A stretch of DNA of 64,000 nt from assembly GCF_001194135.2 (NCBI RefSeq), contig NC_068990.1:45614827-45678826 (forward strand), written 5' to 3'. The stretch is from Octopus bimaculoides (Eukaryota). The position numbers and the translations under genes were made by a program. The notes under the pieces are model-generated. The model saw only the letters and a list, made by a program, of their open reading frames with translations. It had not been told where the DNA came from and searched no databases. Of the stretch, positions 3,957-61,568 are shown in pieces. Position 1 is the stretch's first letter; every line of letters starts with the position of its first letter.

Positions 3957-4124
3957 TCATTGCCACAAGTTAGTTGATAAAGTCTGTCCTGAAGTAGGCT
4001 GCATGCCCCAGGGATTACTAGCTTGATTAGCAGGAGCTCCAACAGGTGGCCGTACTCCCATTTGACCAGTGGGTGGGATGACATTTGATGTATTTAAACG
4101 CATCGCTGCTAACTGGTGTTGCAT
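3957..4124 (-). CDS. SMAP1: SMAP terminal coding exon MQHQLAAMRLNTSNV...PWGMQPTSGQTLSTNLWQ*
   Basis: tctttcttacag|ATG at 4124, TGA at 3959-3957; C-terminus GQTLSTNLWQ matches the SMAP GQTLSTQLWK-type terminus. Confidence 0.93.
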   Translation of the reverse strand: MQHQLAAMRLNTSNVIPPTGQMGVRPPVGAPANQASNPWGMQPTSGQTLSTNLWQ

Positions 4125-4237
4125 CTGTAAGAAAGACATTGAGAAGAAATTAGTTGTAATGAAAATATGAGAGTTTTGTGGGGTAGAAAGTAAAATAAGT
4201 AAAAGATTTAAATTGAGTTCCTTCTACACTAAAACTA

Positions 4238-15235: not shown

Positions 15236-15374
15236 CTGGAACGCCGAAGATGTTCTGTTGCTGGGGAGTTGAAGATCCATACAATGCCATTATGGATTCT
15301 TTCGTGGTCTTATCATTACCACTCTTAGCATCAGAACTGGCACTGGTGAAAAGAGAATCATCAAATGCTCCATT
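15236..15374 (-). CDS. SMAP1: SMAP exon NGAFDDSLFTSASSDAKSGNDKTTKESIMALYGSSTPQQQNIFGVP-G
   Basis: tttctttccag|AAT ... CCA G|gtatag; 139 nt; TKESIMALYG corresponds to the conserved SMAP SKDSILSLYG-type motif. Confidence 0.9.
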
Positions 15375-51259: not shown

Positions 51260-53100
51260 TCATGTTAAGTGGTAGAATGAGTTGGAGAGAGTCTGCTTAG
51301 ATGAGATGCAGTTTGGTTTTGTGTCAGGTAGAAGCACCACTGATGCTATATTCTTGGTATGGCAACTGCAGGAGAAATACCTAGCCAAAGATAAACTCCT
51401 ATACTTGGCTTTTGTGGACTTGGAGAAAGCCTTTGACAGGGTCCCCTGATCCCTTATCTGATGGGTGATGCAGAAACTGGTGATTGACGAATGGTTAATA
51501 AGGGCTGTACAGGCCCTATACAGAGATGCCGTTAGTAAGGTTAGGGATGGCAATGAGTATAGTGATGAATTTCGGGTAGAAGTAGGGGTCCACCAAGGGT
51601 CAGCCCTCAGCCCCCTCTTATTCATCATAGTCCTCCAGGCAATAACAGAGGAATTCAAGACAGGTTGTCCTGGGAGCTCCTCTATGCTGATGACCTGGCC
51701 CTCATAGCAGAATCACTACCAGAAATAGAAGAAATTTCAGGTGTGGAAGCAAGGTTTAGAATTGAAAGGCCTTTAGAGTCAATGTTGCAAAGACCAAAGT
51801 TCTGGTAAGTAGGAAAGCGAACACATTACACACCCCTTCAGGTAGGTGGCCATGCTCGACCTGTAGAAAAGGTGTAGGTAGAAACTCCATAAGATGTACC
51901 CGGTGTAAGCTATGGACACATAAAAGGTACAGCAGCATCAAAGGAAGATTAACCGGGAAGATAGCCTTCATATGCAGCAGATGCACAGGGGCAATAAACA
52001 TCACAGATGCTCAGAAAACAGATTCCATCACATGCCAGGGGGAGAAACTAGAAGTAGTTAATAGCTTCTGCTACCTAGATGACCAAGTCTGCAGTTGGGG
52101 TGGATGCTCAGAGAGTATTACTACAAAAATAAGAATAGCCTGGGCAAAGTTTAGAAAGCTTCTACCCCTACTGGTGACAAAGGGCCTCTCACTCAGAGTG
52201 AAAGATAGATTGTATGATGCATGTGTGCGAACTGCCATGCTTCACGGTGGTGAAGCATGGGCTGTGACTGCTGAAGACATGCGTAGGCTCGAAAGAAATG
52301 AAGCTAGTTTGATCAGTTGGATGTGTAATGTCAGTGTGCACACACGACAAAGTGCAAGTGCCCTGAGAGAAATGTTGGACATAAGAAACATTGGATGTGG
52401 CGTGCAAGAGAGACGTTTGCACTGGTATGGTCATGTACTACGGATGGATGAGGAGAGCTGTGTGAAGAAGTGCCACTCCCAAACAGTGGAAGGAATCCAG
52501 AGTAGAGGGAGACCCAGGAAGATATGGGATGAGGTGATGAAGCATGACCATTGAATGTTGGACTTCACAGAGGCAATGACAAAAGACCAAGACCTCTGGA
52601 GATATGCTGTGACCGAGAAGAATCGGCAAATAAAGTGAGTTTACAGCTGTAACCTACACCAGTGTCGCATAGCCAGCCCACTCAAAAGTACCTTGGATCG
52701 TAGGGTGACATGCCGTACTTGAGGAGACCTATTGAGTCAAGTCCATCAACATCAAATGGAAATTGTAGTTGTGATCCCCATGCCGGTGGCATGTAATAAG
52801 CACCATCCAAATGTGGTCGATGCCAGCACTGCCTTGACTGGCTTCCATGCTGTTGGCACGCAAAATGCACCAACTGATTGTGGTCGTTGTCAGCCCCCTC
52901 TGGCTCCTGTGTCAGTGGCATGTAAAAAGCACCCACTACACTCTTGGAGTGGTAGGCATCAGTAAGGGCATCCAGCTGTAGAAACACTGCCAGATCAGAC
53001 TGGAGCCTGATGCAGCCTCCTGGCTTCCCAGACCCCAGTCGAATCGTCCGACCCATGCCAGCATGGAAAACGGATGTTAAACGATGATGATGATGATGAT
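51260..53100 (+). mobile_element. 5'-truncated RTE-clade LINE (RT domain, C-terminus, 3' UTR, (GAT)n tail), frameshifted
   Basis: QFGFVSGRSTTDAIF, FVDLEKAFDRV, GVHQGSALSPLLFIIV, LYADDL, RLHWYGHVLRMDE, GRPRKIWDEV; tail gatgatgatgatgat at ~53083-53100. Confidence 0.92.
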
Positions 53101-56090: not shown

Positions 56091-56257
56091 AACATACTGA
56101 AAAATATGGCATAAATTCTAAAACTGTCAAATTTAATTGCGGGAATTAAATATATTCCATGAATAAATAATAATAGTAAGATCACATTATATATTTCAAA
56201 GTATCTTTCTTTTAAGAAGATTTACTGAGCATAAAAAAGAGAAAATGATCAAATTAC

Positions 56258-56348
56258 CTGTTTTGGTACTGTTGGCTTTGGTTGAACCCACTCACGAGCT
56301 ATATAACGCTTGTGTTCATATTTAGCCCTGATAAAAGCTTCCAATGCA
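56258..56348 (-). CDS. SMAP1: SMAP exon ALEAFIRAKYEHKRYIAREWVQPKPTVPKQ (end of ArfGAP domain); start is 56348 (GG acceptor) or 56354 (AG acceptor, adds CG)
   Basis: Matches the ArfGAP FIR.KYE.K.Y motif; donor CAG|gtaatt at 56257; both candidate starts keep frame. Confidence 0.92.
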
Positions 56349-57133
56349 CCACAACTTAGTCAAAGTACAATAACAATCAGATGAAAGTTAATCATTTAAA
56401 GTAACTCATTATAAATGTTTGTAGGCTGAGGACAAAACAAAAATCGAATAAGAAGAAAATCATTAAATTTAATTTAAATTCATACTGATTATTGATCGCT
56501 TTCACTTTCATTAAACAATAATATACCTGTAGGTAAAATTAATTACACATTCCAATTTCACATGTAAACAATCGTCAAAAAGAACAGAAAGCTCCTTTCT
56601 TGCCAGTAGGAACAGAAATCCTCCATCTAAACACACACAAATTCCCATACCATCACTACCTGCGCCAAAGTTCCACATGTGAGATTTACATACTAGATGA
56701 AGCTTGCAATATATTCTAGTGACCTTGCTTTACACTTGGAAGAATCAGAAAAATATCAGATGAGTGAACACACTGTAAGCGTTCACTGCACCACATTTAG
56801 TGGAAATAACAAAATCATCACATTAATAAACAATATAATAAAATTGATGAAGGATAATGATAGCCTAGCTTGGACTCAGTCTTTTTTCTCCCACAAACCT
56901 AAGATTATTCCAACCATACATCACCTTACACTCTACATCACTGCATGTCCATGCCATAGGGTATAGTATGAACCTTAGCAGAATGAGTTGTTTGGATGCT
57001 GGCGATTTGGCAAGGTTGACTGGACATTGAACCTGTTATGGTGGCAATACTTTTTGGCACTGAAAGCAGACACACAGGTATATACACAAAAAGAGAAATA
57101 TGCTTCACACACATAGACAGGGGGAAAGAGGGT

Positions 57134-57173
<40 letters not shown>

Positions 57174-58163
57174 ATAAGAGAATCATTAAATGAGAGAAAT
57201 ATTAACACATCTGATGTCAAATAAATCAGCATCAAATCAGTGATGCCAAATAAGTGGTGCCAAAATGGCTGTACTACAATGTGACACAATATAACTGAAA
57301 CACAAACCTGACGGCTATGTCAGTTCATTTCGCACCATGTAACTGTTTAAATAGAGTTGACATGAGGCAACACTCTCCTGTTCACTGTATGTTCCAATCC
57401 AAACAGACACACGTACATGTACAACTAACTACAAACACCCAAATATTAATATCACACCAGTACAAATATTATGTCACTCTCAATAAACATAAAACACACA
57501 CTAAAATAACTGAAGTACCAACTGTCACATTAGCTTTAAACAAAATCTGTGCTGTCCTGTTAACCTTCTCTAATGAATCCTTGCCTAAAAAAAGGAAAAC
57601 TTGTGTGTGCATACTAGTCTCCAATTACACCACAAGCAGCATAATAATACAGACACAACTTAGCCTGACTGTCAATGTGTACCTTATGTGGTTAAATGGT
57701 TGCATATAAGAACATAGAGTTCAGAAATAACTCTCTCTATATAAAATCCAAACAAAGTTAGCAGTAGTAACTGAGAATTAAATGAAAGAGATCAATGACA
57801 TGGAATATTTTCAGGCCATTGATTTCTTTCATTTATTGAATAGCTCCTCCTATCTCTTCTTTTATTATATTTTTGTATGCAAATAATCCGGCATTTATAA
57901 ATATGACCCAAATTATCAAACTTCAAAACTAAAACCACTTACTTGAATACTGACAAAATAAACTTTTATATTGTATTAAAATAGTTTAACAAATTGACAA
58001 GTTCAAAAATGAACACACTTCCTGTTAATTAAAGAGTGTCACTACCTATGGAAAATACAAATTTCAAAGATTCCTGGCTGTATGTGAATGTGTGTGTGTA
58101 TATATATATATATCGTTATTTAATGGCAGCATGGAGGACATACATTAAATGATGATAATGATG

Positions 58164-60815
58164 TATATCATCATCATTTAATGTCCACTTTCCCTGCTGG
58201 CATGGGTTACACAGGTTGACTGAAGCTGATAAGCCAGAGAGCTGCAGCAGGCCCCAGTCTGGTTTGGCATGGTTTCTACAGTTGGATGCCCTTCCTAATG
58301 CCAACTGCTCCAGGAGTGTAATGGGTGCTTTTATGACCTTGACTATGATTCACAGGTGCTATTTACATGGCACTGGCAATAACCATTGTTACAATTCACA
58401 GGTGCCATTTAGATGGCACTGACCATGACCACGACAATTCACAGGTGCCATTTGCATGGCACCGCCAATGACTATGATTCATGGGCGCCATTTACAAGAC
58501 ACTGCCGATGGCCCAACTCCAATTTCACAGCTGCTATTTACATGACACTAGCAATGGCCATCACTATGATTTCACGGGTGCCATTTACATGACACCAGCA
58601 TAGCCACAACTATGAATTCACTTGACCTGACAAGTCTTCACATGCACAGTATATTACCAGAGGTGTCAGTCATCACCTCCATGAGGCCCAACATTCGCAG
58701 TTCATGCCTCACCACCTCATCCCATATTTTCCTGGGTGCACCTCTTCCACAGGTTCCCTCCACAGAGATCGACACTTTACACAACTGTCCTCATCCATAT
58801 GCGTCATGACCATACCAGCACAGTCATCTCTCGTGCACACTACATCTGATGGTTCGTATACCCAACTTTTCTCTCAAGATGCTAACACTGTCATACATGC
58901 ACACTGACATTACACATCCAGCAAAGCATACTAGTTTCATTTCTTTCAAGCAAGCCTACGCATGTCCTCAGCAGTCACAGCCCATGTTTCACTGCCTTGT
59001 AGCACAGCTGTTTGCATACAAGCATCATACAGTCTGCCTTTCATTCTAAGGGAGAAGCCCTCTGTTACCAACAGAGGTAGGAGTTCTCTGAACTTTGCCC
59101 AGCCTATTCTTATTCTCACAACTACACTTTCAGAGCATCCACCTCCACTACTGACTTGGTCACCTAGATAACGGAAGCTATCAACTACCTCTAGCTTACC
59201 TCCCTGGCATTGGAAGGAGTCTATTTTCTGTATATTTGTAGTGTTTATTGTACCTGTGCACCTTTCACACACAAAAACTATTTTCCATGTTAACCTTCCT
59301 TTGATATTGCTGCACCTCTTATGCGTCCATAGCTTACACTGAGTACATCTTATGGCATTTCTATCTACACCTTTCCTACAGATCGAGCAGGGCCATCTAC
59401 ATGAAAGGATTTGTGATTTGTCCTCTTTCTTACTTACTAACTAAGGCTTTGGTTTTTGCTAGATTAACTATAAAGTTCTTTGATTCTTAACTTAGCTTCC
59501 ACACTTGAAATTTCTGCTCTAGTCCTGGAAGTGATTTAGCTATGAGAACAAGATCATCAACATAGAGGAGTTCCCAGGGGCAGCCTGTCTTGAATTCCTC
59601 TGTTATTGCCTGGAGGACTATGATGAACATGAGGGGCTGAGGAATGATCTTTGGTGAACCCCTACTTGTACGCTGAATTCATTGTTATACCCACTGCCAA
59701 CCCTTACCTTACTGACAGCATTCCTGTACCTGGCTCGTTTGGCTCTCACCAATTTGTCTATCCTTAGTTTCCATATTGACCACCTGATAAGGGATCGGGG
59801 GGATCCTGTCAAAGGATGTCTCCATGTCAACAAAAGCCAAAAACAAAGGTTTATCTTTGGCTAGGTACTTCTCCTGCAGCTGCCTTACCAGAAATATAGC
59901 ATCAGTGGTGCTTCTCCCTAGCACAAAACCAAACTGTATCTCATCTAGACTTTCTTCCTAATTAGTGGGCTATGACCCTCTCTGTAACTTTCATTACCTG
60001 ATCTAACAGTTTGATACCCCTATAATCATTTCTCTCTAAGACATCACCTTTACCTTTGTAGCAGTTGACTATGATGCTGCTACACCAGTCATTGAGTATT
60101 ACTCCCTTGTGTATAACCTGGTTTACTATATGGATAACTAGACTATACCTCACGTCGCCAGATATTTTAAGCATCTCAGCAGTGATTCCTGATGGGTCAG
60201 GGGCTTTCTTGGTCTGCATATCTTTTGTAGCTTTTTCTACCATGCTACTGGCTATTTGGATTGCTGGTCCCTCTGTTGGATCCACATTAGGTGACTCTCC
60301 TTCTCTTATGTGTTCTCTACATTTAGTAGCCTTTCATAGTGGCACTTTCAAGCCTCTTTCTTTGCGGAGTCACCAACTGCAAATGAACCATCATCCATGC
60401 AAATACACTTCTCTCCCACAACATCACAATTTTCCCTGGCACACTGTCTTGCAAGCTGAAAGACTTCAAGCCTCTGTAAGACATTGGCAAACTTCTTCCT
60501 TTCTGCTTCACTCCTAGCTAAGTATTCCTAGCTTCCATTCTAGCTGCCTGATATAACTCCTTGCAACCAGCTCCCTTGCTGGGACTTTGCACCAGCCACA
60601 AATTTGGTCTGAGCCTCTCAGTAAGTTGTCCCATAGGAACTTCCAGTTATCCTCTATATTGTAAGTCTGTAACTCCTCCTCCTTCGCATCAAATGCATCA
60701 TTTAGGAAGTCTCTAAATCTCTGACTATTCAAAGGATCCTTAAACTTCTAGATCCTGCTTTTCCAAACTGGCTTGCTTCTTGGAATCCTTCCAGCCAGTA
60801 GCTTGAAGTCCCCAA
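58164..60815 (-). mobile_element. 5'-truncated RTE-clade LINE (~2.65 kb) inside the U12 intron, sense to the host gene
   Basis: ORF pieces KAPDPSGITAEMLK, NCYKGKGDVLERNDYRGIKLL, RSTTDAIFLVRQLQEKY, LEVVDSFRYLGDQV, SETWAVTAEDMRRL; (CAT)n tail at ~58168-58177. Confidence 0.92.
58345..58618. repeat. Minisatellite, 6 degenerate 40-47-bp units in the RTE 3' UTR
   Basis: Units of cacaggtgccatttacatggcac...gactatgatt. Confidence 0.8.
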
Positions 60816-60949
60816 TAAGTAACCTATGCTGTAGAATACATTCTTCTCCAGGTAAGACCTTTGCATATATATGTGTGTGTGTGTGTGTGTATAAGTATAT
60901 GTGTGTGTGTATGTATATATATATATAATATGTATGTATGTATTATGTA

Positions 60950-60986
<37 letters not shown>

Positions 60987-61482
60987 AGTGGTTGGCATTT
61001 GGAAGAGCATCCAGCTGTAAAAACTCTGCCAAAACAGACATGGTAGCATGGGGTAGTCTTCTACCTAGCTGGCTCCTGTCAACCGTCCTACCCATACATG
61101 CATGGATGACAGAAATTAAATGATGATGATATATATACACACATGCATATATGTATGTGTGTGTGTATGTGTATTTTTATACACACATTCGCACACAAAC
61201 AAATGTCCGTGTTGTTAAGAAGTTAGCTCCCCAGTCACATGGTTTTGGGTTCAGTGCCACTATGTGGCACCTCAGACAAGTGACTTCAACTATAGCCCTA
61301 CAGTGGTATACAGATTCATGATCCAACAGCCATTAGCCTAATATCTTATCCTTTTGTGAGAATGTACCAGTTTTATATGTGTACAATGCTTTAATTTTAA
61401 ATAGTGCTTGTAATTGAAATAAAATTTGAGAAATACACTTTCAGTTTGAGTGTTTTTCACAAAAAAAAAAAAAAAAGGATAC

Positions 61483-61568
61483 GAATCTGTCTGCGGTCTT
61501 CGGAAATTATCGGGAATGTTAGCTTCATAAACAGCTCTTGCACGACTGTTTCCCATTTCCATTAACAT
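61483..61568 (-). CDS. SMAP1: SMAP-family ArfGAP, first coding exon visible in window (ArfGAP domain C-terminal half), MLMEMGNSRARAVYEANIPDNFRRPQTD-S; gene 5'-incomplete
   Basis: Acceptor ttttttgcag|ATG at 61568; 86 nt (phase 0 to 2); donor |GTATCCTTT at 61482. Peptide matches the recalled SMAP1/2 ArfGAP segment MGN..AR..YEA.LP..FRRPQ.D. SMAP1 versus SMAP2 cannot be resolved, so the symbol denotes the family. Confidence 0.93.

What the first reader, a model, noticed from the sequence alone, without database searches (positions are those of the whole stretch)
56340..61490. U12-type intron in the SMAP ArfGAP domain with a probable non-canonical GT-GG terminus
Seen: the donor after ...ACA GAT TC is GTATCCTTT, a perfect minor-spliceosome 5' site. 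The 3' end reads ttgTACTTTGACtaagttgtgg|T GCA TTG GAA. The U12-like branch A (56360) is only 5 nt from the sole nearby AG (56356-56355) but 11 nt from GG (56350-56349). Established: U12 3' sites are set mainly by distance from the branch point (roughly 10-20 nt), and rare terminal dinucleotides are tolerated. Inference: splicing at GG gives QTDS-ALEAFIR, the same register as recalled vertebrate SMAP (QTDQ-AVEFFIR). Splicing at AG inserts an extra CG dipeptide into the ArfGAP fold. Both are in frame, so an AG-only annotation would silently mis-model the protein, or two isoforms 6 nt apart could coexist.
Basis: partly seen in the sequence, partly recalled or inferred. Interest (0 to 1): 0.82.

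Follow-up and report, generated by a model that had tools for sequence, protein, structure and literature searches.

The report
Minor-class intron ending in GG
An ancient minor-spliceosome (U12-type) intron in the SMAP ArfGAP gene ends in GG instead of AG, and RNA-seq shows it is spliced only at that GG; this is a rare but already described kind of intron.

Summary
On the minus strand, exon 61568-61483 ends ...CAGACAGATTC and is followed by GTATCCTTT. This 9-mer occurs once in the 64 kb. The 5,134-nt intron ends TACTTTGAC(A=56360)TAAGTTGTGG|TGCATTGG.

In three raw RNA-seq runs, 150 reads cross from 56348 directly into the end of the upstream exon. Depth at 56349-56354 shows no reads ending at the AG site (95% upper bound about 2%). 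Transcript contigs from four other runs, covering three species labels, carry the same junction. Two independent DNA runs have the same genomic sequence, GG included.

The intron sits at the same phase-2 position as the catalogued minor introns of human and mouse SMAP1 and SMAP2. Six other invertebrate loci have GTATCC(T) there. Five of those six have TTCCTTGAC 10-14 nt before a normal AG, and the sixth has a weaker branch site.

So this is a U12-type GT-GG intron. Its 3' site is chosen 11 nt after the branch A, and the AG 5 nt after the branch A is ignored. GT-GG minor introns are already known (5 human, 3 mouse in Sheth 2006). This is therefore a new member of a known kind and of modest interest. 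Dependence on the minor spliceosome itself was not tested.

The parts
61483..61568 (-). Upstream coding exon (86 nt; MLMEMGNSRARAVYEANIPDNFRRPQTD + first 2 nt of the Ser codon), part of the ArfGAP domain
   Evidence: RNA-seq depth is confined to 61483-61568. Loose ends at 61568 lead to an exon outside the window. With the next exon it matches Pfam ArfGap positions 69-116 of 117.
61474..61482 (-). U12-type 5' splice site GTATCCTTT (followed by a T run)
   Evidence: only copy in the window. Depth falls to 0 in two runs, and to 2 unspliced reads in the third, exactly after 61483.
56349..61482 (-). The intron, 5,134 nt, phase 2, termini GT...GG. It contains degraded retroelement fragments and microsatellites.
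   Evidence: length; tandem repeats; RT-like ORFs inside the intron. The only ORF that scored against RVT_1 lies outside it, at 51465-51707.
56359..56367 (-). Branch-point sequence TACTTTGAC, inferred branch A at 56360
   Evidence: It aligns with TTCCTTGAC of orthologues. The core CTTTGAC is present in 27 branch-site entries of the human/mouse minor-intron list. The branch nucleotide itself is inferred, not mapped.
56355..56356 (-). Unused AG, 5 nt after the branch A
   Evidence: There is no depth step at 56354/56355 in any run.
56349..56350 (-). Terminal GG, the 3' splice site actually used, 11 nt after the branch A
   Evidence: 150 reads have loose ends starting at 56348 that continue as the reverse complement of the upstream exon end. 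Contigs of X1, X11, X13 and X14 show the same. Genomic DNA of two independent runs is identical.
56258..56348 (-). Downstream coding exon (91 nt; third base of Ser + ALEAFIRAKYEHKRYIAREWVQPKPTVPKQ), followed by a U2-type donor cag|GTAATT
56426..56427 (-). [quoted passage not shown]
   Evidence: 5 loose-end reads at 56427 continue at 57685-57714. Pyrimidine fraction is 0.77.
57683..57757 (-). Rare cryptic exon inside the intron. Its 3' end at 57683 (aag|GTACAC) is defined; its 5' end near 57757 is approximate.
   Evidence: 3-5 reads in X21 only

Best explanation
This is the orthologue of the conserved minor-class (U12-type) intron of SMAP-family ArfGAP genes, in a genome where the terminal AG has become GG.

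Inferred from established knowledge of the minor spliceosome: U11 and then U6atac recognise the perfect 5' site GTATCCTTT, and U12 pairs with CTTTGAC, bulging A56360.

Shown by RNA-seq: the second step takes the first acceptable nucleotide pair at the preferred distance, which is GG at 11 nt. It does not take the AG at 5 nt, which is too close to the branch.

The result is the conserved protein register ...RRPQTDS|ALEAFIR... inside the ArfGAP domain, essentially as a single isoform.

The change from the ancestral ...AG|TGC is either an A-to-G substitution or a 3-nt deletion of TAG. It was tolerated because choice of the U12 3' site depends on distance from the branch more than on the dinucleotide.
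For: Junction:
- 74+40+36 reads have loose ends at 56348 whose consensus is the reverse complement of ...CGATAATTTCCGAAGACCGCAGACAGATTC.
- In 3-nt bins, depth is 80/40/31 at 56346-48. At 56349-51 it is 6/0/0, with no step at 56354.
- Depth drops sharply after 61483.
- Transcript contigs of X1 and of organisms B and C carry the same junction.
- No bases are shared across the joint, so its position is unambiguous.

The genomic GG is real:
- DNA contigs from 2015 and 2025 runs are identical over 56230-56480.
- The 6-8 reads of X21 that run on into the intron past the 3' site show no difference there. Most of them belong to the rare cryptic-exon isoform rather than to unspliced pre-mRNA.

Minor class:
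- The 5' site matches 9/9, in the only copy in the window.
- The branch-site core occurs in accepted mammalian minor introns.
- The 11-nt spacing lies within the reported 11-13 nt optimum, and lack of a polypyrimidine tract is a class feature.
- Pyrimidine fraction is 0.59, against 0.82 and 0.77 at two U2-type acceptors in the window.
- SMAP1 (TCA|GTATCCTTT, TTTTCCTTAAGT) and SMAP2 (CCC|GTATCTTTT, TCATCCTTAATA) are listed minor-intron genes in human and mouse, and the exon ends fit the same phase-2 position.
- L001, L002, L003, L009 and L011 have GTATCCTT ... TTCCTTGAC ... 10-14 nt ... AG at the same site. L010 has the same donor with a weaker branch site.

The GT-GG minor subtype is already documented.
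Against: - No functional test of minor-spliceosome dependence was possible.
- The branch nucleotide is inferred, not mapped.
- The branch site deviates from the consensus at two positions (TACTTTGAC against TTCCTTGAC).
- Only three raw RNA runs, all from one study, were sampled at about 6% each, so a tissue-specific AG isoform cannot be excluded.
- The taxon and existing annotation of the locus could not be seen, because run and organism names are coded.
Confidence: 0.9

Rival explanations
1. The intron is removed by the major (U2-type) spliceosome using a non-canonical GG acceptor.
For: U2-type introns with non-AG 3' ends exist (Sheth 2006 lists candidates). At one orthologous locus (L012) the intron at this site is U2-type (GTACGT plus a pyrimidine tract).
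Against: - The donor ttc|GTATCC lacks -1G, +4A, +5G and +6T for U1 pairing, but matches the U12 consensus 9/9.
- There is no polypyrimidine tract.
- A U12-type branch site sits at the class-typical 11 nt.
- Mammals and five other invertebrate loci have clear U12 signals at this site, and a sixth locus (L010) has the U12-type donor with a weaker branch site.
Confidence: 0.04
2. The GG is an assembly error or a reference-specific allele, and the transcribed allele really has AG.
For: A related species (L009) has ...GGTGGTAG|TGC, only 3 nt longer.
Against: - Contigs of two independent DNA runs (2015 and 2025 studies) are identical to the window over 56230-56480, with no differences.
- The reads of X21 that run on across the site into the intron show no substitution or insertion, even with the reporting threshold at 1%.
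Confidence: 0.02
3. Two isoforms coexist: GG is used for the conserved register, and AG at 56356-55 gives a protein two residues (Cys-Gly) longer.
For: Both are in frame. Selection of U12-type 3' sites is reported to be error-prone.
Against: In X22 and X23 depth is exactly 0 at 56349-56354. In X21 depth there equals the background of reads that run on into the intron, with no step at 56354. That is 0 of about 145-150 spliced reads, a 95% upper bound of about 2%. A branch-to-AG distance of 5 nt is far below the 11-13 nt optimum.
Confidence: 0.04

Closest known systems
Minor (U12-type) introns of vertebrate SMAP1 and SMAP2 (Olthof et al. 2019, PMC6717393, supplementary list)
   Same: Same gene family and the same phase-2 position after ...RRPQ(T/I)D plus 2 nt, inside the ArfGAP domain. 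The 5' site is the same, GTATCCTTT (SMAP1), and a U12-type branch site is present.
   Different: The vertebrate introns were catalogued with standard branch sites (TCCTTAA). Their 3' dinucleotides were not read here. The window's branch site is CTTTGAC and its terminus is GG.
Mammalian U12-type GT-GG introns (Sheth et al. 2006, PMC1557818: 5 human and 3 mouse, e.g. ARAF conserved, SLC12A7 GG in human and AG in mouse)
   Same: U12-type 5' site with a GG 3' terminus. It differs from the canonical terminus by one base. Switching between GG and AG among related species is documented.
   Different: Different genes and phylum. Here an unused AG lies 6 nt upstream, and RNA-seq shows exclusive use of GG.
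Orthologous introns in other invertebrate assemblies (L009, L011, L003, L001, L002, L010)
   Same: Same site and phase, with the donor (T/C)TC|GTATCCTT. Five of the six have the branch site TTCCTTGAC 10-14 nt from the 3' end.
   Different: All end in AG. Intron lengths run from 186 to 4,844 nt, against 5,134 nt here. L012 has converted to U2-type, and several genomic ORFs show that the intron is absent in other taxa.

Membership tests
U12-type (minor-class) spliceosomal intron | Conserved 5' splice site [G/A]TATCCTT(T) at +1 to +9 | tested here: met
   GTATCCTTT at 61482-61474, a 9/9 match and the only copy in the window. The exon end at 61483 is verified by RNA depth.
U12-type (minor-class) spliceosomal intron | Branch-point sequence resembling TCCTTRAC close to the 3' end (optimum 11-13 nt from the 3' splice site) | tested here: met
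   TACTTTGAC, with its A 11 nt before the verified junction. The core CTTTGAC occurs in listed mammalian minor introns. Distance criterion from the Turunen 2013 review.
U12-type (minor-class) spliceosomal intron | No distinct polypyrimidine tract before the 3' splice site | tested here: met
   Pyrimidine fraction 0.59 and longest pyrimidine run 5. Two U2-type acceptors in the window have 0.82 and 0.77 with runs of 10.
U12-type (minor-class) spliceosomal intron | Excision depends on U11, U12, U4atac and U6atac snRNPs | not testable with these tools
   This needs knock-down, a morpholino or in vitro splicing. No snRNA gene lies in the window.
U12-type (minor-class) spliceosomal intron | Positional orthology with recognised minor introns (supporting, not defining) | tested here: met
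   Human and mouse SMAP1 and SMAP2 are listed as minor-intron genes with matching exon-end codon phase. Six invertebrate loci have the U12-type donor at the same site, five of them also with TTCCTTGAC.
GT-GG subtype of U12-type introns | Terminal dinucleotides GT and GG defined by transcript evidence, not by annotation alone | tested here: met
   150 junction reads in 3 raw runs and 4 transcript contigs. The junction is unambiguous and the genomic GG is confirmed in independent DNA runs.
SMAP-type ArfGAP gene | ArfGAP domain (PF01412) and SMAP-like C-terminal region | tested here: met
   The two-exon peptide matches ArfGap positions 69-116 of 117 at E=1.5e-6, exactly at the curated cut-off. 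Homologues carry PF01412, and some are named stromal membrane-associated protein. tblastn with a human SMAP1 sequence recalled from memory finds C-terminal exons at 15240-15362 and 3960-4136 (a lead only).

The most novel reading that the evidence does not exclude
The loss of the terminal AG may be a recent, lineage-specific event in this group. The weakened GG terminus might then make removal of this intron rate-limiting or regulated. The rare cryptic U2-type exon and acceptor inside the intron, seen in one of three samples, could be a non-productive outlet, because an in-frame TGA follows. In that case the locus would be a natural in vivo demonstration, outside vertebrates, that the minor spliceosome picks its 3' site by distance alone and skips an AG 5 nt from the branch.
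Probability: 0.15. Interest if true: 0.45.

Novelty: new member of a known kind. Interest (0 to 1): 0.3.

Why it matters
It is a clean, RNA-verified natural example of how minor-intron 3' sites are chosen. GG at 11 nt from the branch is used exclusively, while AG at 5 nt is ignored.

It also shows that gene predictors that insist on AG would either insert two residues (Cys-Gly) into a conserved ArfGAP helix or break the model.

It adds an invertebrate case to the small set of GT-GG minor introns. It also traces one ancient minor intron through four states: kept (AG), kept (GG), converted to U2-type, and lost. It does not change what is known about the mechanism.

Tried and rejected
The junction was therefore read from loose ends and fine-binned depth on each side. 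The donor-side loose ends were never printed ('not shown').
The genomic 3' end of that near relative is therefore unknown.
- Transcript contigs of organisms B and C give the junction but not the genomic dinucleotide.
- A look-up of the window's own 31-aa ORF over the 3' exon found nothing.
- One protein query was too short. The third protein search returned only 6 hits, none from close relatives.
- The organism's annotated SMAP protein is not in the collection (best hit 86% identity), so the suggestion that the annotation mis-models the site could not be tested.
- Full-text searches for SMAP1 or SMAP2 together with U12 or 'minor intron' found nothing relevant. The information was in a supplementary table.
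- No formal intronIC or PWM score was computed, because the matrices are not available here.
- An Rfam scan of the window found nothing.
- A-to-I editing cannot create AG from a genomic GG, so it was rejected as an explanation.
Full report
**What is in the sequence.** On the minus strand an exon runs from 61568 to 61483. It follows an ordinary acceptor...ttttttgcag|ATGTTAATGG, and ends ...CCGCAGACAGATTC. The next bases are GTATCCTTT followed by a T run.

About 5.1 kb downstream the sequence reads ...ttattgTACTTTGACTAAGTTGTGG|TGCATTGGAAGCTTTTATCAGG..., and the next donor, cag|GTAATT, follows 56258. The positions are as follows:
- The A of GAC is at 56360.
- The only nearby AG is at 56356-56355.
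- GG is at 56350-56349.

GTATCCTTT occurs once in the whole window on both strands. About 0.8 copies would be expected anywhere by chance, and the single copy sits at a verified exon end.

**Which junction is used.** Three raw paired-end RNA-seq runs of the source organism (X21-X23, each about 6% sampled) were laid on the acceptor region.
- 74, 40 and 36 reads stop matching at 56348. They continue with GAATCTGTCTGCGGTCTTCGGAAATTATCG at agreement 0.99-1. This is the reverse complement of the last 30 nt of the upstream exon.
- No base is shared between ...GATTC|GTATCC and ...TGTGG|TGCATT, so the joint cannot be slid. It is 61483^56348, and the intron is GT...GG, 5,134 nt, phase 2.
- In 3-nt bins, depth is 80/40/31 at 56346-56348. 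It is 6/0/0 at 56349-56351 and 8/0/0 at both 56352-56354 and 56355-57. No read therefore ends at the AG-defined position 56354.
- That is 0 of about 145-150 spliced reads, a 95% upper bound of about 2%.
- On the donor side, depth falls from about 73/42/28 to 2/0/0 exactly after 61483.
- Transcript contigs from an independent study (X1) and from two other species labels (X11 and X13 = organism B; X14 = organism C) carry the same exon, 56258-56348, and the same junction.

**The genomic GG is real.** Contigs from two independent DNA runs (studies of 2015 and 2025) match 56230-56480 without a single difference. The reads in X21 that run on from the exon into the intron show no substitution or indel.

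**Which spliceosome.** Direct sequence evidence points to the minor class.
- The 5' site is a perfect U12-type GT-subtype site. It is a poor U1 site: -1C, +4T, +5C, +6C.
- CTTTGAC can pair with the U12 branch-binding sequence as C-G, U.G, U-A, U-A, G.U, bulged A, C-G. This pairing is my inference from the established U12-branch site interaction.
- The same core occurs 27 times among the branch-site strings of catalogued human and mouse minor introns, for example CNEP1R1 TTTCCTTTGACC.
- The 11-nt spacing lies within the reported 11-13 nt optimum. The class is characterised by lack of a polypyrimidine tract and by tolerance of non-canonical termini (Turunen et al. 2013, PMC3584512).
- The pyrimidine fraction at -25 to -4 is 0.59, with a longest pyrimidine run of 5. 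Two U2-type acceptors in the same window have 0.82 and 0.77, with runs of 10.

**Comparative evidence.**
- The supplementary catalogue of Olthof et al. 2019 lists SMAP1 (TCA|GTATCCTTT; TTTTCCTTAAGT) and SMAP2 (CCC|GTATCTTTT; TCATCCTTAATA) as minor-intron genes in both human and mouse. I infer from recalled vertebrate SMAP1 and SMAP2 protein sequences that the three exonic bases fit ...gaT CA| and ...gaC CC|, that is Asp plus two bases of the next codon. That is the same phase-2 site as gaT TC| here.
- A protein search with the exon read through into the intron found many genomic ORFs from other animals ending ...RRPQTDSYP... This is the translation of TC|GTATCC.
- For seven of them the contig held the donor region.
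- L009, L011, L003, L001 and L002 have (T/C)TC|GTATCCTT, then TTCCTTGAC, then 10-14 nt and a canonical AG.
- L010 has the same donor with a weaker branch site.
- L012 has GTACGT plus a pyrimidine tract, so it has converted to U2-type.
- Other hits are genomic ORFs in which RRPQTDSALEAFIR is uninterrupted and flanked by intron-like sequence, so the intron has been lost there.
- In every homologue the protein register is ...QTD(S)-(A/S/G)LE.F.R, with no two-residue insertion.
- The two exons together match Pfam ArfGap positions 69-116 of 117.

**How the GG arose.** L009 is the closest relative for which both intron ends were recovered. Its exons are 84-85% identical in DNA and about 96% in protein. 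Its intron is only 186 nt and ends TTCCTTGACTACATGGTGGTAG|TGC. The window has TACTTTGACTAAGTTGTGG|TGC.

Two alignments are equally parsimonious:
- a deletion of TAG, which leaves the preceding GG as the new terminus;
- an A-to-G change at the penultimate position together with a 3-nt indel in the spacer.

Either way the exon boundary and the protein were preserved. L004 is a closer relative (81% identical through 1.4 kb including intron sequence) and has the same donor, but its 3' end was not recoverable.

**Comparison with what is known.** GT-GG is a documented, rare subtype of U12-type introns.
- Sheth et al. 2006 count 5 in human and 3 in mouse. ARAF is conserved as GT-GG, and SLC12A7 is GG in human but AG in mouse.
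- The pan-eukaryotic survey of Larue and Roy lists GT-GG among the non-canonical minor termini found in conserved minor-intron sets of animals and plants. It also reports that most human minor introns are conserved in an octopus.

The mechanism and the class are therefore known. New here are this particular member, the demonstration that GG is used exclusively although an AG lies 6 nt upstream, and the comparative series for one intron position.

**Limits.**
- Minor-spliceosome dependence and the branch nucleotide are inferred.
- Only three raw runs from one study were sampled.
- The organism is coded in the tools.
- Whether current annotation has the right junction could not be checked.

**Verdict.** This is a new member of a known kind, of modest interest.

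Noticed in passing
window 56425-56427 and 57683-57757 (minus strand): In run X21 only, 5 reads join a cryptic exon inside the U12 intron (ending ...CCACATAAG at 57683, donor GTACAC) to a U2-type acceptor (pyrimidine tract + AG at 56427-26). They then read through the last 77 nt of the intron into the exon. The in-frame TGA inside the branch site would end the reading frame. This is about 5 reads against 74 for the main junction. The 5' end of the cryptic exon is not defined.
   Followed up: partly
window 3960-64000 (minus strand): The SMAP-like gene spans essentially the whole window and continues beyond 64000. The exon encoding ...LDTWTAEQLA is not in the window. tblastn finds C-terminal exons near 15240-15362 and 3960-4136 (...SGQTLSTNLWQ). 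Introns are many kilobases long.
   Followed up: partly
window 58600-60300 (minus) and 51280-52560 (plus): There are two degraded retroelement-like stretches in opposite orientation with similar ORF fragments (e.g. ...RSTTDAIF.VRQLQEKYLAKDK...). One lies inside the U12 intron and one in the next intron. Only a weak sub-threshold RVT_1 match was found (E=6e-5), for the ORF at 51465-51707.
   Followed up: partly
window 58348-58621, 57134-57173, 60866-60985: The intron contains a 46-nt tandem repeat (about 5.6 copies, 71% matches) and (GA)20, (TG)15 and TATG-type microsatellites.
   Followed up: no
L012:7675-8320 and hits P0129, P0131, P0133, P0134, P0137: At the same intron position some species have GTACGT, GTATGT or GTATGC donors instead of GTATCC. 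In L012 this comes with a pyrimidine tract and CAG, an apparent conversion of this minor intron to U2-type. In other taxa the intron is absent (e.g. P0011, P0016, P0044).
   Followed up: partly
window 61516: In run X23, 3 of 58 reads show C instead of A on the plus strand (T>G on the transcript strand). This is not the A-to-I editing signature and is probably an error or a rare variant.
   Followed up: no
runs X37-X41 (organism D) versus window 56230-56480: The index reports 52% of the sampled 31-mers in five runs of a fourth species label. Yet none of the three of these runs that were tried (X37, X38, X40) had a contig that could be laid on the stretch, even at 80% likeness. This is unexplained.
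   Followed up: partly
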